Positions 16,956 to 47,634 of a DNA stretch of 64,000 nucleotides are shown in pieces. The stretch covers positions 1,565,988 through 1,629,987 of the forward strand of contig CAJFCJ010000005.1 of NCBI GenBank assembly GCA_904063045.1, written 5' to 3'. The position numbers and the translations under genes are program-made. This stretch comes from Dimorphilus gyrociliatus (lineage: Eukaryota; Animalia; Annelida). The stretch's first letter is position 1, and the number at the start of each line of letters is the position of its first letter. The notes below the pieces were generated by a model, which was given only the letters and a program-made list of their open reading frames with translations, was not told the origin of the DNA and made no database searches.

Positions 16956-19900
16956 TGGGGGAATATTGGCGACGGGCCAAAATCAGAAGTTATTCCAACC
17001 GAAAGCGGCGCTGAGCAACGAATCGAAAAATCAATAGCGGTAAACAGCGCCAGTCAGCTTAAAGACAACCACTAGCAAACTTACTATGAAGGAACATCTA
17101 ATACTGGCGGTATCTAATAAGACTGGCTAAGTCGGTACCGCATATTGGGGACACAGGTGGCGCTGGCGCTGCCCTGAAGGGAAGGAGGCACTTATCGTTG
17201 TCCGAACTTTACCTCAAATCAGTAGAGGATAGTAATTTGTCGACTGACGAATCAACAACTGGTTCTGCTCCAACACTTTTCTGTGAGTTAGTTCATTATA
17301 AAGAACCTGATGGAAAAAAAAGAAAGCGAAGGCGGAAGAGAAGAGCTTTAGATATGGGAGGAGCCAATACAGTTCCTCTTGAATCGAACGTGGACGTGCC
17401 GAATTCGAATGTTGACTCTGCAGCTTATCACAGGTTGAATGATTTTGAAACGCTCGATCAACAGTCAAGATTAATTGATCAATTGCCGAAATTAAACCAA
17501 TCCATATCAATTGACTTGGGTGCTATTTCGTCCGAGAAAAATGAAAAATATTTCAAGGAGGATCCGCAAAAGTTGATGATATCTGAATTCTCAATTCAAA
17601 GCGGTAGTGAAAATATAGAATTGTCTGAAAATAATAGTCAAGAGGATTATCCTGGATCAAAACTAACACAAATAGAAATTGAAAGGAATTTTAACAGCAG
17701 TGCTCTTTCAACAGGCGGTCTGGCTGGTTCTGATTCCATAGGACATTCGCTTGATGATGAAACTTTAAATTTTGATATTAAACATCAAAGCTGTTTAAGT
17801 GATTCGGATGGTGGTGTAAAAAATAGTAATTCTTCTCCAATGACTAACGCCAACAACGAGAGTGCATTATTTATAGCACTTGATACGACTAAGACGGATT
17901 CAGATTATTGGCCAGGCCAAGAAAAGGAGTTGGAGGAGGCCGAAGAACTCTCTAAATTAGAATCCATGGACCACAAAGCTAATTTATCAGTGGCCGAACA
18001 CGATCTTGAATTGCCATATTTAGCAAAAGATCAACCTAATAAAGACAATATTGAATTTCAATCTGAAAGTTTACCAACGAATGAGAAGAATTTAGGTATG
18101 TCAAAAGAATTGACGGAAGAGGATAATTCGGAATCTCCCCAGTCGACTGACAACGGTAATCGCAGCGACGATTCGTTTCTTTCTAATCCTAAAGAAGGGG
18201 ATGCCGTTGAAATTTCAAGTGCTTTAGAACATACTCAGGTAGTTGGATTCAATGTCATGCCGAACAAAAATAGACGCTTTGACACTGAAGAAACTGATTC
18301 ACAACAGGTTTGATCTTAAATGTTTATATTTTTCTCACTATTACTGTAGTTTTTCCTGCCAGATGATAATGAATTCAAAGTCAACAATGACAATTCCAAG
18401 GGGAACTGTTGCTCAAGACATACAAATGGTTGGTCTACAGCCTAAAAGGCAAATTCAGTTAGCTGAACCGCTTCCCTGCTATGTTTTCTCCAAGTCTGAT
18501 GACGGAGAATTAACAGAATCGGCCCTTGACATTGAAATTCATCCTTGGAATCAGAATGAAGCTTTAGTTTTAGAGACCACCGAAAAAGAACCATCAGATT
18601 TTGATTCAAATAAAACTTTTGCCTCCACAATAGAATTGCAACAGAGAAGTATTCCACAATCTACCGATTCGGAGCGTCTCGACGCTGGCGTCGATACTCG
18701 AGATTTGGTTACAAGTTTTGAAGATATGCAAAATCTACCTTATGAAATTTTTGTCGGTGCTGAAGCTATCAGGGATGAATGGTTGAATAGAAATCCAGTT
18801 TTGCAAAGATCGTTTTCAACTTCGGATATTCCTCAAGAGAAATATAGAAGTGAACAACGTCGACCTAGTTTGGAGATTAAGCCACTAGACGAAAAAACAA
18901 CTTCTACCGATAGTATTCTATTAGTTTTCGTGCCGTCCGGGGATAAGCGTCGAACTCTTGAATCGAGTTTTGACGGTTATAATCCCTCTCATTTTTATAC
19001 AGTTCCAATTTTTGAAAGATCTGTTAGTGCTGATATGCTCAAAGTTTTCCGTCCAAATGAATGTCCAAAAAGGTCAAGATCCTTAGAAGATATTGAACCT
19101 TTGGAGGATGATATTACTGCTGATGAAATATTTGCTGAAAGTCTTCGCCAATCTGAACAATGGAAGGAAGAAATATGTAATGAAGGAGAGCCTGAAGAAG
19201 AAATTTTCAGAAAAAAAGTTAGTTGGGCTGATTTATCAAGTGAAAAATCTCCGAAACCTTCCCGAACTGTTCAGACTCAAACTTTCTTGCCTCATATAGC
19301 AACTCTTGCTCAAAAAAAGCTTGAATCTGCAAAGGGTGCGCAAGTGAAATTAACCTGCAATTTTGGAACTCAAACATCACAAGAAGTTATTGATAAAACG
19401 CTATTAGGGCTTGCGCTAGATAGAGAACAAGAGTTAGAAAGAGATTTCAGAAAAAGAAAAATAGAGTTTGCGGTCCAAGTCAATTTTCCTAAAGACAACT
19501 CTGTTAAGAATATAGGCTGTCAAACTGGAGATGTTTCTCAAGTACCTGAAGAAATTCCCACTGACGAGATTCGTAACAATGTCAATATCGATAGACAAAA
19601 TTCTAAAGATAATGAAAGTATTGAAGATTCAAGCGAAAAATTTTCCCGTTCGCTTTCAAGGGAGAACCTTGAGGAGTCTTTAACTGCTAGTAGTATTGAG
19701 CCTTTCACAACTCTTGACAAATTGATCTCAGAGAATTTGATAAAACCGACTGTCGAAGATTCGGCTGATGACAATGCAAAAGCCAATAGCGCGTCTGATT
19801 CTGATAGAGACAATAGTGAAGAAAGCCCTAAACCTAGAACCAGTTTGGAATCTTTCCAAACTCTAAAACACGAAGATAGTCAACATGTACCTCAAACGGC

Positions 19901-22900
19901 TTGCGAAACAGGCCAAGAAATGACAGTTACAATTATGAGCCGAGAAAATGTCAATATAGAGGAAGTAGAGCAAACAATTGCAAGTAATGTAACCTCAGGT
20001 GGTGTCAAGATTACAAAACCTGATATTTTACAAGATAAGCAAAGAGTTGAAAAGAATAAATTAGCTGGAGCATTAACTGATTTTAAAGAATCGTCAGTGG
20101 ATCAACCGTCAGATCTATTATACGTGTCCAAAGGTGAGTTGGATAGGGGGGAGGGCGAATATAAATTGCAAAAAGGGGAAGGAGGTGAATCGCAAACAGG
20201 AGCTAAAGGCGCATTGCCAAGTGACAAAGAAGGTAGATTCCACAAAGAGGACGAGAGTGAACTGCAAAAAGAAGATGATAAATCGGAAAGAGGAGAGGAA
20301 GATAGACTTCAAAAAAGAGACGAGGGTAAACCACAGAGGGCAAAAGAAGGTGAAATACAACAAAAGGAAGAAAATAAACCTCAAACAGGAGCCGAAGGCG
20401 GATCTCAAAGAGGGAAACCAGGTAGATTGCAAATAGGAGAGCAAGGTGAACCACAAAGAGGAGAAGAAGATAGACTCCAAAAAAGGGACGAAGGTGAACC
20501 GCAGAAAGGAGCCGAAGGTAAATCGGACAGAGAAAAGGAAGCTGGACTCCAAAAAGGAGATGAAGGCGAATTTCCAAGAGGGAAAAAAGGTAGATTGCAA
20601 GCAGAAGAAGGAAAACCGCAGAGAGGAGAGGAAGGTAGAATCCAGGGGGGAGATAAGGGTGAATTACAACAGAGAGAAGAAGGTAAATCGGAAAGAGGAG
20701 AGGAAGGTAGAATCCAGGGGGGAGATAAGGGTGAATTACAACAGAGAGAAGAAGGTAAATCGGAAAGAGGAGAGGAAGCTAGACTCCAAAAAGGAGACGA
20801 GGATGAACTACAAAAGGCAGAAGAAAGTAAATCGGAAAGAGGAGAAGAAGCTAGATTCCAAAAAGAAGACGAGGGTGAACTACAAAAGGCAGAAGAAAGT
20901 AAATCGGAAAGAGGAGAGAATGCTAGACTCCAAAAAGGAGCCGAGGATGAACCACAAAAGGCAGAAGAAAGTAAGTGGGAAAGAGGAGAGGAAGCTAAAC
21001 TCCAAAAAGGAGACGAGGATGAATTACAAAAAGGAAAAAAAGATAACTTTCCAAGCAAGAAGAGAGATATTCAAAGGCAGGTGGTAGCTGGTTCTCAGGA
21101 TTTTTCTTTGGACGAGGTTCTGCAAAACGTAGAAGCAGACCCACTTTTAATATTAGAGGAGGAAAAGATACAAATTAAAAACGTTTCGGCTACTCCCTCA
21201 TTGGGCTACTCTATTCACACAGATATACATCTTGAAGCTGAAACTACCCTAAAATTTCAAGATCCTTCTATAATAGCTGCAAAGGTTTCCACTGATGACG
21301 ATGAAGTACCACCGAAATTTAATGTGGTCAAATCAGCTGAAGTACTGGAATACGAAAAGTATTTAAGAGAATTAGACAACGAGGAAGGTGAAAGTGATGA
21401 TCAATATGATGAGAATAAGGAAATGGAATTGAAAGAAGGTAATTTAATTAAAGAATGCTCCGAGGAAAATCCTTTTAATGAATCGAATGAACCAGGCTTA
21501 AAATCGATGAGTGATCTCCAAAAGATTAGCTCTGCAGGAAATGAGGCCGGTGAAATTGAACATAAACCGTCGAAAATATTGCACGAAACATTTGTTATTG
21601 GACAAGATTCTATTGAAGAGCCAGTTGCATTTGATTCTCCTGAGCCACATGAATTTAGAAAAGCTGAAGACTTGGAGTCAGGTGATTTTAAAACAAACAT
21701 TGGTCGCTTAACAAAAAGTGAGTTTTTCATGAATATGGAAGATACCGAAGAGTCTGACGATGGATCTTCCGATTACGATGCAAATCTTTTGGGTACAATT
21801 AAACTAGTTCACCCGAATGAATCAAGTTTATCTGGTATAGAGGATAGATTAGAAGAAATGAAAGAAGACTCTAATAATGATAAATCTATTCGTGCAACTA
21901 GTGGCCTCATGACAGAATTGAGTTTGAAAGCAATAGCTATAAGTGATCCAGCTTTAGCACAGGCAAAAGCAGACGAGAGCTATCATGAAGTATCTGCTAA
22001 GTTTGATTCGATGAAGCCGTGTGAAGATTCTAAACAACTTTCAGATGTTAATCCTGGACAAAATATACGGGACAATAAAGATAAAAATGTCAGCGATATT
22101 GATAACGAAAATTTGCCTAGCATTGGTATCGCAAAACAATTTGCCGACAACCAGAGAGAGACTGGTAAGGTCGATGAAACACGATCTGCTACTTTGGTTG
22201 ATGAACAATTGAAAATTTCTGATAAGAAGCTATCTATGACAGTTGGTGAGGAAATTGGAGAAACGGAAGTTAAAACGAAGAAGGAAATGGTTTTTGCAGA
22301 CGAACTAGAATTGTCAAATAGCCAGTTAACTGCTGAAAATATAGCCGAAACCGAAAGAAAGTCAGCCTTTGTCAATCAAATACTTCAAACAGAAAAGTTG
22401 ATATCGTCAAATAATATATCAACTCAGACAACTTTTGAAGCCAGCCCTCCAGATAAGGCCATTTCACCTGATTCTAGTAAGGTTAAGAAGAAAAACTATG
22501 ATAAACGGAACAAGAATTCTTCGACTTGTGTAGAAGATTCTTGCCAGACCGAGCTAACCTTTCCTCCAACCGAGACCTCTACAAATCTTCCAAAGTACGA
22601 CTTTCAAGATCCAAGTCTGGCTAGTTTAAAAGAGGAACATGAAAAGTTGTTATCTCTTTTAAAACAATCAAAAGAAGAAAAATTGAAATCTTTAAAGTTG
22701 AAAAAAAATTTGCTCTCATCGATACGCAAGGAATACAATTTAAGTACATCTACAGATTCTCTTCCAATTATCATAGTAGAGGAAGCAGATGACGATTGTG
22801 AAGATCTTGTAGAATTACCAAGAGACCGGTGCTACTCTATGAATGAACAACTTTTAGAAATAAGCTTGAACAGAAATCCAAATTCTCTATCCGGTATTGA

Positions 22901-25764
22901 AATAAGTTCCCCGGAACTGTACGAAATATTATCGAAATCAACGGATAGTGAAAATATTGAGGACATTTTAGCAACAAACACAAACATATCCGATGATCTT
23001 ATAGAACAAATAAGACTTGCCAAAGATGCTCTAGCCAGGGCTATGGGGGGTAAATCATCATCAGAGCAAGTTATGAGAGGATTTATTACTCCAAATCTTC
23101 CTGTCGTTACTTTACACTTAATGAACGTGGAGACAAAATCGGACGTAGGTAATATTGTTGAAGATGTACTTGAAGAGACAGAAATTATTGAAGACGTTCA
23201 TGTTGAGAATGCGAAAAGTTTTAAACCTTATCCTTTTGTGGAAACAGTCAGCAATATCACCCAACCAATTTCACCTATAAGCGATGATCAATTTCACGAG
23301 CAATCGAAAAATGTACAGGGTGGAAGTACCTCATCCTCAGGTTTTCATGAAATGAAAGTCAGCCTTCAAATGTCACCTCAAAATCTTCAGAAATTAAGCA
23401 AAAAGTATAAGGATGCTAAAATGAAATCTAATCGCTCTGATGCCTCAAATGAGAATGCTAAGTCAACTGATCGCCCATTCGACAGTATATCATCGTTGGA
23501 CTTTGAGGAAATACAATCAGATAAGCTAAAGGGAAGCTTTCTTACTGACTTTGCTTCTTCTTTTGAACTTTTAGACACTGATGAAGAAAATTTCTACAAA
23601 GCGCTCAATACATCAAAAACAAGCGATAGTTCTATTCAAATAGAGGTTGACATGAAGGATGAAAGTATTGGAACTGATGACGAATTAGAAAGACTCCGCC
23701 TAGAGCGGGAGAGAATTTCTAATATGCTTGCTAAAGATGTTCTACCCTCAAATTCTCAAGTTGAGCTTGCTGAAGCTCAAATGAATTATGTTATGGGTCA
23801 AACTGACATACTTCTAGACGCCTTAGACAGAGATGAGGACTCCTTAGAAGAACTTCTAATCGGATTTCAAACTCCCGAAAAGGACATTGAGAGTATTGAC
23901 TATGATTTTCAGACAAGATATCGTCAAGAGCTTACTCTAGAAAGAAACAATATTGAAGATAAAATTGCAGAATTAGAAAATGATCAAGAGAGTAAAGCTG
24001 ACAGCAGCTTCTCTCAACCAGTGTCCTTAAATGTTAGCAGAGAAAGTAGACGCAAAAGAAACGGTCCATCACCCGTTAGAAAAGCCCAATTCGAACGAAA
24101 TGTACAAATTGAAGCGTTCAGATTAGAGCGGCTAAAAGTAAATTCCGATTTTGAAAGGAAGAAATTTACACCAAGATTTAGAAGTTTGAGTCCTTATCGA
24201 GATAATATTGAAGAAAAAGATGAAATTCCCAATGCCCCCATTTATGCAGAATCTCTAACGCCTAGACAAAGAATGAAATATTTGGCAAGCAAACGGCGTC
24301 GACTACTCAGAGGTTTATATATTGTTTAAATATTTTTTAAACTTGAATTATATTGAACACTTTTAAAAAATAATTAGATTCAAAATCGAAAAAGAAGACG
24401 ATTGTAACAACAACAGCCGGTGACTTGTTAACTACCACACCCCAGGTTTATTCAACATCTGTGATATCTAGTTCCTCAAGACATCGTCACTTGGACTTGA
24501 AAGAATTATCTGGATTTGAATCACCACCATTAATTTCAACTCCTCGAAGAGGATCTGATTGGGACGATTCAACTAGAAAATTGTTAGTCGAAAATCAGGA
24601 TGCAAGATCAGCGAATCGAAAGGAAGTTAGAATAGCAAGAGAGGCTTTGGAGAGAACACCTGTTGATCCAGAAAGATATTTAAATTTTGAGGGACATATG
24701 GACAGAATTATTAAACTAGAAGAGGTAAGCGTTTTGCGTGTTTAAAAATTTTGATATAGTGATGTGTTTACCCCTTTGATATTTTCCTAATGCACATGTT
24801 TGTTGTCCTTTATTTTGGTATTAGCCACGGTCTTCTTATTCCCCGCACGATAGCTATTCTAAAAGTAAACGAACGGTAGTTATAACCTTATAAAATTAAA
24901 GAATTCTAAATTATTAATCCTTAATTTCAACTCTTTTTTTAGGCTATTGACAACGAAATTGAACGAATGAAAGTTAGATATCTGCCCGATTTCAACATCT
25001 CCGATACAAGGTAAATAATAGATCAACAACGTCTAAAGAATATATATATTTAGATTGAGGTTTTTTCAAGTGAAAATAAATTAAGAAACCTTCAATAAGA
25101 TCAATCACTATTTCTCTCTTGTATAAAATTAATCGGGAAAACTCTTAATTAATCGACAACGGGTTAGATATTTTTGCCAATAATTCCAATATACTTTAGT
25201 ACTTTAACCCTTTTCTTTGATTATCTTACTAAGATTTTATCCAATAGAGGAGAATTCTCTTCTACTACTATTATCATTTAAAAATGCGCAATTCCTGTTT
25301 ATTAATGCTTCAGCCATTATATATTAATAGATTGGTAATAAATCTATTTAATCCTGATTGTTTGGTATAATATCTAAATGATTGATCTATTAATGTTATT
25401 CTATAGATAGTTTAAATTAAAGTTATTTATATTTTAGTAATTTACACTACTAATATAATTTTATCGAGTAGTAATAAATTGTTTTGCTAACATTATTTTT
25501 AATATTCGATAATCATTGTAGATCGATTTGTTTGCGCTCTTAAAATCGCCTTTTTATTGATAATCGATCAGATTTGAAAAGAAAATAGCTTCTGTTTGTT
25601 ATCTCTTTGTAAAAATCCTATTAAACGAGTATTTTCACTTCCAACTTTCTATTTTCAGGACTACTTATAAAGATTCACTATCGATAGCTGACGCGGCGAT
25701 TAATCGCCACGAACGCACTTTGGCAGCACTTGGTCGAAGTAAAAGTCGAACTTCTAAACCCTAA
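16956..25764 (+). CDS. Giant (about 2,500 aa) acidic, largely low-complexity protein of unknown family with an internal octapeptide repeat and a coiled-coil-like C-terminus; start codon not located
   Basis: Exons about 16956-17040(?), 17132-18307, 18363-24311, 24379-24724, 24943-25010 and 25660-25764 join in frame. One exon is about 6 kb and open throughout. No domain was recognised. Confidence 0.75.
20130..21050 (+). repeat. Coding tandem repeat: 24-bp (8-aa) monomer arranged into a 72-bp (24-aa) higher-order unit
   Basis: Units such as RGEEGRIQ-GGDKGELQ-QREEGKSE. The 72-bp blocks 20622-20693 and 20694-20765 are identical. Confidence 0.95.
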
Positions 25765-42976: not shown

Positions 42977-44366
42977 ATGGATGATCTGAAGGATCTTTTA
43001 AGAAATCATATAACCACTGTTGTTTCAAAAATGTGCCGGCAAGTTCTTCCAGACTCTTTAGATATAAACGTTGAAGGTTCGTAGAAGGAGATCGCTTTTA
43101 AGCAATAGTGTTTCTATTTAAAAATACCTTTTGTTAAATGGGCTATTTTTTCTTCAATAGGTTTAATAGGAATCACTGTGGGCGGAAAAAATGTTCTTTT
43201 ACTACGCATAAACGACGACATAAATCGATGTTCCGACAGCGCAAATTCTAATTCTAATATTAAATATGTTTCAAAACGAAAGCAGAATCGAAAAGATATT
43301 TTGCATGATGAAGATAATATTTCGTGCCATTCAGATAACTGTCAATCAGCTGAAAATAAAGTATTAATCAATTTAAACAACGCCGACGAAAGTCTCCCAG
43401 AGCATGTCTCTCAAATGCTGGGTATGCCTTCCAAATCAAAACCAATTAATCGTGTAGTGGAAGATGTTGCCCAACAAATTGAATTGGAAGAACGAATGTC
43501 GCCCTTTAGAGTAGGAGACAAATGGCTATGCCAAATGTGTAATAAGCAATTTACTACCTCAGTCGCAGCCGTAAATCACATGCAAATTCATACTGCAAAC
43601 ATTCAAACATCTGTTAAAAAACGAGCGACGACGACGCCGGACAAGCAAATTGATTCTACAGACGATCCGGATAATTATCTTCCGGATGGACGGTTAAAGC
43701 CGTACGATTGTTCAGAGTGTCATAAACGGTTTATTAGTAGGTAAGAGCGTTCGGCGGTGCGAAACAAAATTTTCTAATTTAACGCTTCCTCTTAGAACCC
43801 GACTTCTCTGCCACCAGAGAGTGCATTCTGGCGAAAAACCGTATTCTTGTACTATTTGTAACAGACGGTAAGATTTAAGTATATAATTGACGTCCTTTTT
43901 TCTAATTAGCCAGACCCCCTACAGATTTACGCAAAAAGTTCACCTGAGAACTCATATTCGAGTTCACACTGGAGAGCGACCGTACGAATGTCCAGTCTGC
44001 AGTAAGCGTTTTAGTCAAAAAGTTCACATGCAACGTCATAATCGTGTGCATACCGGAGAACGACCTTATCAATGCCCACTCTGCCCTAGAACTTTCTCTC
44101 AAAAGGTTCACGTAAGAGGTCACATGAAAAATCATGCACATGAGGTGGACAAAGAGAAGATGGAAGAGATGGTAAGAAAACTTGAAGAAGAAGACGACAG
44201 GCCCCCTTTATTACGGGCTGAAATGCCAATGGAAGCCGATGTATCGAATATGTCAAATGGAAGTGTTAGTTTATCAATGGACGACGACGACGAATACCCG
44301 CGCTTACAAATTGACGAAAGTTTTCAATCCGTACCGGGCACAGGAACATTAGAAGAAAAATTATAA
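42977..44366 (+). CDS. C2H2 zinc-finger protein A (1 isolated plus 4 linked fingers) with an unnamed N-terminal domain
   Basis: Exons 42977-43079, 43162-43740, 43796-43868 and 43925-44366. TGE(K/R)PY linkers; fingers WLCQMC, YDCSEC, YSCTIC, YECPVC and YQCPLC. Confidence 0.9.
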
Positions 44367-45396
44367 GTTTTTTTTGTTTTGTAACTCTTTGTTTCTTATA
44401 TTGTTTTACATTGAAAAGACGACCAAATATTAAAAAAAAACTTTTTGTATTTTAAACTTAACCAACTGGAGAATTACTTTTATAATTGCGTAACTGCGCA
44501 TCCGCTTCTCGGGAGTTTTAAATGCGATAACAGAGTGGGTTAAAATTATCGATGCGATAAAAATCGGGCATACCAAGAACGCTTGAATGCTATGAAAGGA
44601 ATACGCACTTTCTTCTCCGCGCGATACACAATCTGGCAGGTAGCAACGGTTAAAGGTTTCCTGTCAGCCCCAATTCTTATGCAAATCAACTTGCTATGGG
44701 CGAGAGCGATCTAACAACCAGGTCCGTTATAAATATATATAGGCCAGTATAAGCTGTCATTTTGTTATGCAAATCGCGGCCTACGGCATTGGAATGCGGC
44801 TTGTACAGGTGCGCTGGCACCTGTCTCCCTCCAGGTAGGCCTACTTCTTTGGCCTACGCGGCGGTTCAATGTCAGTCAATTATGCAATATCGTCCGTTAT
44901 GTAATTTTTTCTTTGCTAACAACCGCTTGCGGTTGGCCTACTTTCCCTGGAATCTCTTTCAACCCTTTCCGCCATGAATTCCATTCAATGCATTGTTGAA
45001 CTCGCCTAACGGCGATGGAAGCTAAGTTATACAAAAAATAGCTACCATAAACACATCGGTGGGAAGAGTGTCTCTTTTTACGAGTCTCCTTTGTTTGACT
45101 ACCGACTAGTTCTAGTTAAATAAACAGCCTGTAAAAAAAAGTAGGCCAAACCAAAGGGCAATAGGCCAACTTCGTGGGACGCTATCAGTTTTTTTAGAAA
45201 TAATTCAAACCATACTAGGTGTTTTTGAAACTAGGAAATACCTAATTCTTTCAAAACGGAAATATACATTATGCCTAACTAGTCAGTCACAATATACTGT
45301 TCATAAAATAGCAGTTGGGATTAATTGTTAAAAATATTTGACTAAAACCAGTCTACTACTAGGAATGTGTCACGTGGTTCACATAGGACAGCTATC

Positions 45397-45411
45397 ACAG
45401 CGCCCCCTAGG
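45397..45411 (-). promoter_or_regulatory. Strong CTCF motif CCTAGGGGGCGCTGT next to an E-box GTCACGTG
   Basis: Near-consensus CTCF core between the two zinc-finger genes; E-box at about 45369-45376. Confidence 0.65.
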
Positions 45412-46563
45412 CTCGTCTAGAAGTTACTTTTGTCACAAGGCCGTTTATCGATAGGAACGCTTCCCGATTTTTGCCGTTGAACGTTAAGAATACGATGATA
45501 GTTTGGTAAGTTAACTTATAATTTACTGTAATGTCTAGATACACTAGATATTCGAATAATAACTACTCGTTAAAGTCGCCATGCCCGTTAATGGTGCAAA
45601 ATAAGAAATGCACTCTGCATAGTTTTTTATACATTCCTTACATATTTTCGGGCATTAAAAACCGTAAAGCGTAGAAAACTCGGATAGGTAAATTGATGGA
45701 AAATATGTGAACCCGTTGCATTAGATTTTATTATGCGCATTTTAAGAAAGTCCGATAAATTCTTGGTCAACCGGCGTGGCCTAGAAAATTTTTGGCGCGC
45801 TGTCAGCATAGTCGGATCGCGTGACAGCTGTACGGGATGCACGGAAGGGTCAGACTAGTTTTAGGCCTATGTATTTTTTCGCCCTAATTGCCAATTAGCG
45901 TCGATCGCGATAAGCCGATGGAAAGGGACTGGCAAAGTGGGAGGGGATTAGGAAGGCCCGGTATAATGACGTCATTCAGCCTATGATGTAACTCTTCCAG
46001 AGGTATTATAGACCTATTTTTTTTAAACAATTTACCGTTTTAAGTCGGCGGGTGAGAGTGTCGATGGGACAATAGACTACCAGTTAGGCTTGGGGTATTC
46101 TTACTTTCTCTACTTAAATAACATCATTAGCACAGTTTGCCTAGAAAAGCTCAAACTGAGTTCAATTTTTAGCTTTCGCAACGCCTGTGTCGGTAAGTAT
46201 AATTGTCAAGCTGAATTTCTATAAGCATATCCGCACCTGCACGATTTTCCTAGCTAGGCCTATCCCTGGCTTTCTTGGCGCCAAAGACACATCACGTGAT
46301 TTTCGGAATCTTGCAAGCATGACCTTTGATCTCGAGACGTTGTAAACCGTTAGCCGTCCTTCCCCTCAATTCCAAGTGGCCAGATGTTAGTGTAATGTGT
46401 TCTCGTGTTGTTTTCCGGTTTTTCTTGTCTCTCTTTCCTGCCTTGTTATTGTTTATGTTTTTTTCCATGCGGGTGCGACGAATTTGAATAGGCCTATAAA
46501 TAGCCTAACCGACGCTTGACACCCAAAATAATAGGCAGTTCTCATTTTATTTTCAAACAGATC

Positions 46564-47634
46564 ATGCTCGACCTACAGAAGCAACGTTTCAAGCATTTAT
46601 TGGCGAATGCCATTTTGGAATTATGGAAAAAGGAGACAGGATCTTTATCTTCAGTTTTAATCGAGGGCACAATATGTATTTCCTCCGGCACTGGCAGAAC
46701 AACAGTTATTCAGGTAGCCGATCATTTTATGGGCGTTCTCCATGATTCAGCATTGAATGCATCAGCTACCTCTGAACAACCCCTTCCTCTATATTCCGAA
46801 TCAACAGAAAAGAAGCATGATTCGGGAGCGTTTTCTGATGGAGAGAGTGATCTTAACGTAACCGACGACCCCGATGACGAGCATAAAGATGTGAATGGCA
46901 ACGACTACGACGCTGTTGATAAGAACTGTCGACGGGGAAGGGAGACGCCCCCCGCTACGCCAGCCGAAAAAGACATGCTACCTCTACACGCAAGTACCCC
47001 GGTCCTAGATTTAAGAAAAGATGAAGATTTATCAATATCTTCACCGGCTAATTACACAACACAAGTGCGAGATGTAATTAAGCAGAAATATCTATCTCAA
47101 CGACCCGTATCAACTCCACCTACCGGACCCGTTGCGCCCTGGTTCCTCCCGCCTTCTTCTCACCATCACCTTGCCAACGTCCATATGTTAGCAGCCGCCG
47201 CTGCCGCGGCCAGTTTACAACCTCCGGCTATCAAGAAACGAGCCCTTTCATCGCCTTTTATGCCCTATTCTCCACATCCGGTTTCAGAACCTGCTCATCA
47301 CCAGAAAGAAAAACGATCAGATACTTCCACTGATGAAAAAAGGTCTTACCGGTGCGAGTATTGCGACAAAAAGTTCATGTTCAAATCAAAATATAATGAA
47401 CACTTACCTGTTCACACAAATGAGAGACCCTTCCAATGCCACCTATGCTCCCGAACTTATAAGTACAAGTACGATTTACAGGTTCATCTCAGGACGCATA
47501 TGGGTATTCCGACTAAATCGACTATATGCCCATTCTGTCAGGTGAAATTCGAATCAAATAAATTACTCAGACAACATATTCAGGCGGAACACCGCGATGT
47601 TGGATTAACTAATGAAGACTCCGAGGAAAAATGA
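46564..47634 (+). CDS. C2H2 zinc-finger protein B (3 fingers, intronless CDS) with the same N-terminal domain type, a PVLDLR CtBP-like motif and poly-Ala
   Basis: Fingers YRCEYCDKKF..H, FQCHLCSRTY..HLRTH and ICPFCQVKF..HIQAEH. ATG 46564 follows an acceptor at 46559-46560. Confidence 0.9.
   Translation: MLDLQKQRFKHLLANAILELWKKETGSLSSVLIEGTICISSGTGRTTVIQVADHFMGVLHDSALNASATSEQPLPLYSESTEKKHDSGAFSDGESDLNVTDDPDDEHKDVNGNDYDAVDKNCRRGRETPPATPAEKDMLPLHASTPVLDLRKDEDLSISSPANYTTQVRDVIKQKYLSQRPVSTPPTGPVAPWFLPPSSHHHLANVHMLAAAAAAASLQPPAIKKRALSSPFMPYSPHPVSEPAHHQKEKRSDTSTDEKRSYRCEYCDKKFMFKSKYNEHLPVHTNERPFQCHLCSRTYKYKYDLQVHLRTHMGIPTKSTICPFCQVKFESNKLLRQHIQAEHRDVGLTNEDSEEK

What the first reader, a model, noticed from the sequence alone, without database searches (positions are those of the whole stretch)
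42977..46730. Unnamed N-terminal domain shared by two tandem zinc-finger genes (possible spiralian analogue of ZAD/KRAB/SCAN)
Seen: ZNF-A begins LKDLLRNHITTVVSKMCRQVLPDSLDINVEGLIGITVGGKNVLLLRINDDI and ZNF-B begins FKHLLANAILELWKKETGSLSSVLIEGTICISSGTGRTTVIQVADHF. They share (L/F)KxLLxNxI-helix..(V/I)EGxIxIxxG..hydrophobic strand..D, a roughly 55-aa helix plus three-strand pattern, while linkers and fingers are unrelated. It is not BTB, ZAD (no Cys4), KRAB or SCAN. From unverified memory, similar EGLLGITLD-type segments occur at the N-termini of many mollusc and annelid DNA-binding proteins without a family name. Inference: a lineage-specific dimerisation or effector module defining an undescribed transcription-factor class; the two neighbours might heterodimerise.
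Basis: partly seen in the sequence, partly recalled or inferred. Interest (0 to 1): 0.75.

Follow-up and report, generated by a model that had tools for sequence, protein, structure and literature searches.

The report
Unnamed N-terminal domain of zinc-finger genes
Two neighbouring zinc-finger genes of the small marine worm Dimorphilus gyrociliatus both start with the same ~55-residue domain, which has no name, no Pfam model and no solved relative, yet heads about 30 genes in this genome and nearly 1,900 protein clusters in public data; all the named ones come from annelids and molluscs.

Summary
ZNF-A (42977-44366, four exons) and ZNF-B (46564-47634, one exon) both begin with one ~55-aa domain.

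**Homology.**
- A profile of 20 other copies from this genome ranks ZNF-A exon 1, ZNF-A exon 2 and ZNF-B as the top three of 3,890 six-frame pieces of the window, in register.
- Profile-profile comparison of ZNF-B orthologues against those copies gives 92% probability, E 6e-7.
- The two neighbours are the most distant pair in the family (7/54 identical), so this is not a recent duplication.

**Size and spread.**
- The genome holds about 30 copies.
- A search of 1.84 billion proteins finds 1,899 clusters, with the domain almost always at residue 1-10.
- Partners are C2H2 fingers and, once, a BEN domain.
- Named members are annelids. Structure look-alikes are annelid and mollusc proteins.

**Structure and novelty.**
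- AlphaFold (pLDDT 87) gives one long helix plus a two-strand hairpin, not three strands.
- There is no Pfam, PDB-sequence or convincing fold match.

**Function.** Function is inferred, not shown. A self-association or partner-binding module like BTB, ZAD or SCAN is most likely. Heterodimerisation of the two neighbours is untested.

**Earlier notes.** This scan had already noted the same domain at other loci of this genome.

The parts
42977..43076 (+). ZNF-A exon 1. Start codon at 42977. Encodes the first half of the N-terminal domain (helix and start of strand 1).
   Evidence: Translation. Matches A7 model positions 2-35 at E 1.5e-5. Genome-wide E 0.06 with A4.
43077..43160 (+). ZNF-A intron 1 (84 nt, GT..AG, phase 1). 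It splits the domain inside the Gly codon of the 'EG' motif.
   Evidence: Read from the sequence. The two exon matches meet exactly at model position 35.
43161..43225 (+). Start of ZNF-A exon 2: second half of the domain (the hairpin).
   Evidence: A7 model positions 35-56, E 0.018. A4 gives E 0.0026 in the window.
43226..43740 (+). Rest of ZNF-A exon 2: acidic, low-complexity linker, C2H2 finger 1 and the start of finger 2.
   Evidence: Pfam zf-C2H2 on residues 123-143 of the exon product. Donor AG|GTAAG at 43740/43741.
43796..43867 (+). ZNF-A exon 3: end of finger 2 and start of finger 3.
   Evidence: The reading frame restores the finger pattern. AG at 43794-95 and GT at 43868-69.
43925..44366 (+). 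ZNF-A exon 4: fingers 3-5, acidic tail and stop codon. The whole CDS is 1,194 nt (397 aa).
   Evidence: Pfam zf-H2C2_2 at 4.6e-19 and zf-C2H2 at 1e-13. ORF end.
46564..46731 (+). ZNF-B N-terminal domain (residues 1-56), a divergent member: W in place of the near-invariant C, and C-I-S in place of G-I-T.
   Evidence: Orthologues at E 1e-20 to 1e-14. hhalign against the paralogues at 92%, E 5.9e-7. AF2 pLDDT 87, helix 2-25, strands 31-40 and 46-55.
47026..47094 (+). ZNF-B middle motif (residues 155-177), conserved in all of its orthologues.
   Evidence: Invariant columns D155, L156, P161, Y164, T165, Q167, V168, V171 and L177 in alignment A1.
47347..47592 (+). ZNF-B's three C-terminal C2H2 fingers, nearly invariant among orthologues. 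The stop codon ends at 47634.
   Evidence: Pfam zf-C2H2 at 5.7e-11. Alignment A1.

Best explanation
**What it is.** ZNF-A and ZNF-B are separate genes. Each opens with a copy of one ancient, unnamed domain of about 55 residues. The predicted fold is an amphipathic helix of about 24 residues followed by a long two-stranded beta-hairpin. This domain is the N-terminal badge of a large family of annelid and mollusc DNA-binding proteins, mostly C2H2 zinc fingers and at least one BEN protein.

**The two members here.** ZNF-B is the Dimorphilus orthologue of a strongly conserved, apparently single-copy member. ZNF-A is an ordinary member of the expanded 'EGLLGITL' branch.

**Likely function (inferred, not shown).** The domain is most likely a protein-protein interaction module that makes these factors self-associate or pair, as BTB, ZAD and SCAN do for other zinc-finger families.

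**Confidence by part.** About 0.9 that the domain family is real and shared by both genes. About 0.45 that its job is oligomerisation.
For: **Shown.**
- Independent-profile hits to both genes, in register.
- hhalign 92%, E 5.9e-7.
- About 28 intact copies plus 2 intron-split copies in the 78-Mb genome.
- 1,899 clusters at E<=1e-3 and 1,095 at E<=1e-10 among 1.84 billion representatives.
- 134 of 158 copies start within the first 10 residues of the protein.
- C2H2 fingers lie downstream on the same strand at most loci. One Helobdella member carries a BEN domain.
- The AF2 model is confident: pLDDT 87.
- ESM-Atlas models of annelid and mollusc proteins superpose at TM 0.66-0.81.

**Inferred.**
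- Strand 2 has four consecutive hydrophobic positions (46-49) and strand 1 has a hydrophobic pair (36-37). Both faces of the sheet are therefore apolar, while one helix can cover only one face. That is typical of obligate oligomers.
- The consensus is net acidic, so DNA contact is unlikely.
- Natural ORFs with two copies about 10 residues apart exist.
- 13 of the roughly 30 genes sit in 6 tandem clusters.
Against: - No experiment or multimer model supports self-association.
- The one indirect test, AF2 of a natural tandem pair, gave an unusable model: pLDDT 48, pTM 0.42.
- A helix plus a hairpin could equally dock onto a cofactor or onto another part of the same protein.
- ZNF-B alone is only marginal against the paralogue HMM (E 0.069). 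Its membership rests on the profile-profile score and on the bridging gene ZNF-C.
- The organism is unknown for most hits.
Confidence: 0.55

Rival explanations
1. The domain is an effector module, like KRAB or FiNZ. It recruits a co-repressor or another chromatin cofactor rather than mediating self-association.
For: - It sits at the extreme N-terminus of many zinc-finger genes and the genes form tandem clusters, as with KRAB and FiNZ (PMC10547256).
- The consensus is acidic.
- Near-invariant polar residues T40 and D42 at the hairpin tip could form a binding site.
Against: - No cofactor is known.
- The paralogues are old and divergent (18-46% identity), unlike the young, fast-evolving KRAB and FiNZ arrays.
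- The doubly hydrophobic sheet fits an oligomer core better.
- The two functions are not exclusive.
Confidence: 0.3
2. The resemblance between ZNF-A and ZNF-B is chance. Only ZNF-A belongs to the EGLLGITL family, and ZNF-B has an unrelated N-terminus.
For: - Pairwise identity is 7/54.
- The ZNF-B-only HMM does not hit the ZNF-A exons.
- ZNF-B lacks the near-invariant C21, G38 and D42.
Against: - hhalign gives 92%, E 5.9e-7, end to end in register.
- ZNF-B is the third-best of 3,890 pieces against an HMM that contains no ZNF-B-like sequence.
- ZNF-C bridges the two types: it was found from ZNF-B and itself finds the EGLLGITL genes.
- The ESM-Atlas model of ZNF-B superposes on a mollusc zinc-finger cluster at TM 0.53, and an EGLLGITL-type protein matches the same cluster at TM 0.71.
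Confidence: 0.07
3. The domain is an extra DNA-contacting element of MADS-box-like topology (long helix, then a hairpin that dimerises on DNA).
For: The order of secondary structure is the same. SRF and MCM1 cores appear in the Foldseek list (ranks 9, 13, 39).
Against: - Those matches are noise: E 1.4-2.3, TM about 0.3.
- The consensus is net acidic and its helix carries few basic residues.
- There is no sequence match to any PDB chain.
Confidence: 0.03

Closest known systems
ZAD (zinc-finger-associated domain, Pfam zf-AD), arthropods
   Same: A small N-terminal module. It heads lineage-expanded, often clustered C2H2 genes and has a presumed pairing role.
   Different: ZAD is built around four zinc-binding cysteines. 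This domain has a single conserved Cys, no Pfam hit and a helix-plus-hairpin model.
BTB/POZ of transcription factors, including the TTK group (lola, fruitless)
   Same: An N-terminal module combined with C2H2 fingers. One search shows several finger blocks behind that copy.
   Different: BTB is about 95-120 residues with a different alpha/beta fold. There is no Pfam BTB hit even at E<=10.
KRAB (tetrapods) and FiNZ (cyprinid fish; PMC10547256)
   Same: Lineage-restricted N-terminal tags of large zinc-finger families. FiNZ was also found as an unnamed conserved N-terminal sequence.
   Different: KRAB and FiNZ are short (FiNZ is 28 aa) and act as repression tags of young, fast-evolving genes. This domain is a folded unit of about 55 aa with old, divergent paralogues and a deeply conserved single-copy member.
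SCAN domain (vertebrates)
   Same: An N-terminal zinc-finger-associated oligomerisation domain.
   Different: SCAN is all-helical and about 80 aa. There is no Pfam hit, and the model here has a beta-hairpin.

Membership tests
ZAD (zf-AD) | Four conserved cysteines that bind one zinc ion | tested here: not met
   Only one conserved Cys (position 21, 99%) in 158 copies. ZNF-B has none at that position.
ZAD (zf-AD) | Match to the Pfam model | tested here: not met
   No hit at E<=10 for domain-only queries, and none in 150 family members.
BTB/POZ | Match to Pfam BTB; a core of about 95 aa or more | tested here: not met
   No hit. The conserved block is about 55 aa.
KRAB | Match to Pfam KRAB (A-box motif) | tested here: not met
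   No hit.
SCAN | Match to Pfam SCAN; all-helical fold | tested here: not met
   No hit. The AF2 model has two long strands.
FiNZ | 28-aa Glu-rich N-terminal motif of cyprinid zinc-finger genes (PMC10547256) | not testable with these tools
   No FiNZ model or sequence was at hand. Length (about 55 aa against 28 aa) and host taxa differ.
MADS-box | Significant fold or sequence match; basic DNA-binding helix | tested here: not met
   Foldseek E 1.4-2.3, TM about 0.3. No PDB sequence hit. Acidic consensus.
The unnamed 'EGLLGITL' N-terminal domain family (defined here) | Significant match to a profile built from copies other than the one tested | tested here: met
   ZNF-A exons at E 1.5e-5 and 0.018, co-linear at model positions 2-35 and 35-56. 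ZNF-B by hhalign at E 5.9e-7.
The unnamed 'EGLLGITL' N-terminal domain family (defined here) | Position at the extreme N-terminus, ahead of a DNA-binding region | tested here: met
   Both genes start with it and end in C2H2 fingers. 134 of 158 copies start at residue 10 or earlier.

The most novel reading that the evidence does not exclude
This is an undescribed zinc-finger-associated domain with a fold of its own. It would be the annelid and mollusc counterpart of ZAD, KRAB, SCAN or BTB, and it oligomerises or pairs a whole class of C2H2 and BEN factors. That class includes one deeply conserved single-copy gene (the ZNF-B family) and lola-like genes with alternative finger ends.
Probability: 0.4. 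Interest if true: 0.75.

Novelty: new variant of a known kind. Interest (0 to 1): 0.6.

Why it matters
**Context.** N-terminal partner domains (KRAB, SCAN, ZAD, BTB, FiNZ) define how the largest transcription-factor class of animals is wired. Each one has opened a field: TE silencing, insulator pairing, isoform codes.

**Gap.** Annelids and molluscs have large zinc-finger repertoires but no such named module.

**What this offers.**
- A folded, deeply conserved domain that heads nearly 1,900 protein clusters would give spiralian genome annotation a new family.
- It would give developmental and chromatin biologists a concrete handle, with testable partners, for a so far anonymous class of regulators.

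**Where to start.** The compact Dimorphilus set of about 30 genes is a tractable starting point.

Tried and rejected
- **ZNF-B-orthologue HMM alone.** It finds only ZNF-C, not ZNF-A. It is too narrow.
- **Word-indexed protein searches.** The search with P0097 residues 1-70 and the one with the 150-sequence alignment gave almost nothing. The taxonomic range could not be widened this way.
- **Cluster look-ups.** Only 5 of 30 proteins carry names, all annelid: four N-domain hits (Dimorphilus, Helobdella, Paralvinella, Capitella), plus the ZNF-B orthologue of Lamellibrachia named.
- **ESM-Atlas search by features.** No hit.
- **Fold searches.** Foldseek against the PDB gave no match better than E 0.7. 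VIA-align wide gave a best Z of 4.0, on pseudopilins, which is below the noise level stated by the tool.
- **PDB sequence search.** Nothing better than E 0.34.
- **AF2 of a natural two-copy ORF as a pseudo-dimer test.** pLDDT 48, so it is unusable.
- **Synteny.** No second copy lies within 5-10 kb of the ZNF-B orthologue in four other species.
- **Transposon origin.** No transposase, integrase or RT domain in 150 members.
- **Rfam and repeats around the two genes.** Nothing apart from the 84-nt finger unit.
- **Literature.** No paper describing this domain was found.
Full report
**Organism and setting.** The window is G000:C5:1565988-1629987 of a 78-Mb assembly. A GenBank protein of Dimorphilus gyrociliatus (DgyrCDS14313) maps exon by exon to contig C33 at 91-99% identity. 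The genome is therefore this annelid or a very close strain. GC content is about 32-40% and introns are very short.

**Gene models.**
- ZNF-A has four exons: 42977-43076, 43161-43740, 43796-43867 and 43925-44366. All have GT..AG borders. The frame restores five C2H2 fingers, and the CDS is 1,194 nt, or 397 codons.
- The first intron (84 nt) cuts the N-terminal domain inside the Gly codon of its 'EG' motif.
- ZNF-B is one ORF, 46564-47634 (356 aa), with three C-terminal fingers.
Each was searched by reference, and the joined step is left out.

**ZNF-B is a conserved orthologue.**
- Its first 75 residues find 20 proteins at E 1e-20 to 8e-14, with 60-81% identity. One is a Lamellibrachia satsuma hypothetical protein.
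- The full alignment shows three conserved blocks: the N-domain, a middle motif (residues 155-177) and three nearly invariant fingers.
- The Dimorphilus protein is much shorter than the others (356 aa against 376-617 aa).

**From two genes to a family.**
- A six-frame search of the genome with the ZNF-B domain found a third zinc-finger gene, ZNF-C, at C6:2313875-2314060.
- ZNF-C in turn found genes whose N-termini read '...EGLLGITL...', like ZNF-A.
- Profiles built stepwise (A3, A4) find about 28 intact copies and two intron-split ones. The split ones are ZNF-A and a gene at C3:643720-645253.
- 13 of these genes lie in six tandem clusters.
- At most loci C2H2 fingers follow on the same strand within a few kb. 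Two loci (L063, L066) show none within 7 kb.

**Are ZNF-A and ZNF-B truly members?**
- I built an HMM from 20 EGLLGITL-type copies (A7), which contains neither ZNF-A, ZNF-B nor ZNF-C. Against all 3,890 six-frame pieces of the window, the three best hits are ZNF-A exon 1 (E 1.5e-5, model 2-35), ZNF-A exon 2 (E 0.018, model 35-56) and ZNF-B (E 0.069, model 5-49). The next hit is at E 0.49.
- The two ZNF-A halves are adjacent, co-linear and abut at model position 35.
- hhalign of the ZNF-B orthologue profile (A6) against A7 gives 92.2% probability, E 5.9e-7, over 52 columns in register.
- ZNF-A shares 30-35% identity with its nearest paralogues but only 7/54 positions with ZNF-B, the lowest value in the set. 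The neighbours share a domain family but are not recent duplicates.
- The ZNF-B orthologues of four other species have no second copy within 5-10 kb.

**Size and spread.**
- hmmsearch of profile A4 against 1.84 billion representative proteins gave 1,899 clusters at E<=1e-3 and 1,095 at E<=1e-10.
- In the best 150 proteins, 134 of 158 domain copies start at residue 10 or earlier.
- The consensus has near-invariant C21, G38, T40 and D42.
- Named members are Dimorphilus, Helobdella robusta (a BEN-domain protein), Paralvinella palmiformis and Capitella teleta (both C2H2).
- ESM-Atlas structure neighbours are one annelid and four mollusc clusters at TM 0.66-0.81, two of them C2H2-rich.
- Most hits are unnamed first-exon ORFs from raw assemblies. 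This explains why only 6 of the 150 show fingers. It also means that occurrence outside Spiralia is untested.
- Several ORFs carry two copies about 10-40 residues apart.

**Structure.**
- AF2 on ZNF-B's domain with alignment A4 gives pLDDT 87 and pTM 0.65. The model has a helix at 2-25 and strands at 31-40 and 46-55.
- Nothing convincing matches it. Foldseek against the PDB gives a best E of 0.7. VIA-align wide gives a best Z of 4.0, below the tool's own noise level. No PDB chain matches by sequence.
- No Pfam model hits the domain, even at E<=10.

**Mechanism (inference).**
- Positions 36-37 and 46-49 are hydrophobic in at least 96% of copies, so both faces of the small sheet are apolar.
- One helix can cover one face only. 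The other face needs a partner: another copy (oligomer), a cofactor, or another part of the same protein.
- The consensus is net acidic, which argues against DNA contact.
- These points, together with the N-terminal position, the pairing with two kinds of DNA-binding domain, the tandem-copy ORFs and the gene clusters, resemble BTB, ZAD and SCAN.
- My only indirect test, AF2 of a natural two-copy ORF, failed for lack of alignment depth: pLDDT 48.
- I rate oligomerisation at about 0.45, cofactor recruitment at about 0.3, and the rest as other or unknown.

**Known or new?**
- Five literature searches found no description.
- The nearest precedent is FiNZ, an unnamed N-terminal motif of cyprinid zinc-finger genes named in 2023 (PMC10547256).
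- UniProt names the members only after their C2H2 or BEN parts.
- I could not query InterPro member databases other than Pfam.

**Earlier notes of this scan.**
- The same unnamed domain was flagged at other loci of this genome.
- One note (s1-080734) describes a gene at about C5:4.086 Mb as having one such front module and alternative finger ends. My one search shows that copy (L065) followed by three separate finger blocks.

**Verdict.**
- Heterodimerisation of these two particular neighbours has no support.

Noticed in passing
window 46564-47634; alignment A1: The ZNF-B family has a second conserved block (residues 155-177 here) and three almost invariant fingers. The Dimorphilus protein (356 aa) is shorter than its relatives (376-617 aa) and has lost their 'GTGYY' motif.
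   Followed up: partly
G000:C5:4085697-4091400 (L065): One N-domain exon is followed on the same strand by three separate zinc-finger blocks.
   Followed up: partly
G000:C3:643720-645253 (L064): A second intron-split copy of the domain. Its intron of about 1.3 kb lies two residues upstream of ZNF-A's intron position, so the two introns are probably independent.
   Followed up: no
G000:C33:4789-12982: The GenBank model DgyrCDS14313 (1,419 aa) spans two domain copies, at C33:4801 and C33:12053. It is either a fused gene model or a real two-domain protein. Identity to G000 is 91-99%, not 100%, so the strain or assembly differs.
   Followed up: partly
P0094 (Helobdella robusta T1FJQ8): The same N-terminal domain is fused to a C-terminal BEN domain instead of zinc fingers.
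   Followed up: partly
P0022-P0026, P0028; L067:436-813: ORFs from other assemblies carry two copies of the domain in tandem, with short linkers.
   Followed up: partly
G000:C3:443278-443448 (L063) and C1:2255424-2255594 (L066): These are domain copies with no C2H2 motif within 7 kb downstream. They may have other partners or be stand-alone.
   Followed up: no
window 18243-24329 (+): A single ORF of 2,028 aa with a long internal run of Glu/Lys/Gly-rich degenerate repeats. GC and AT skew peak at 20-22 kb.
   Followed up: no
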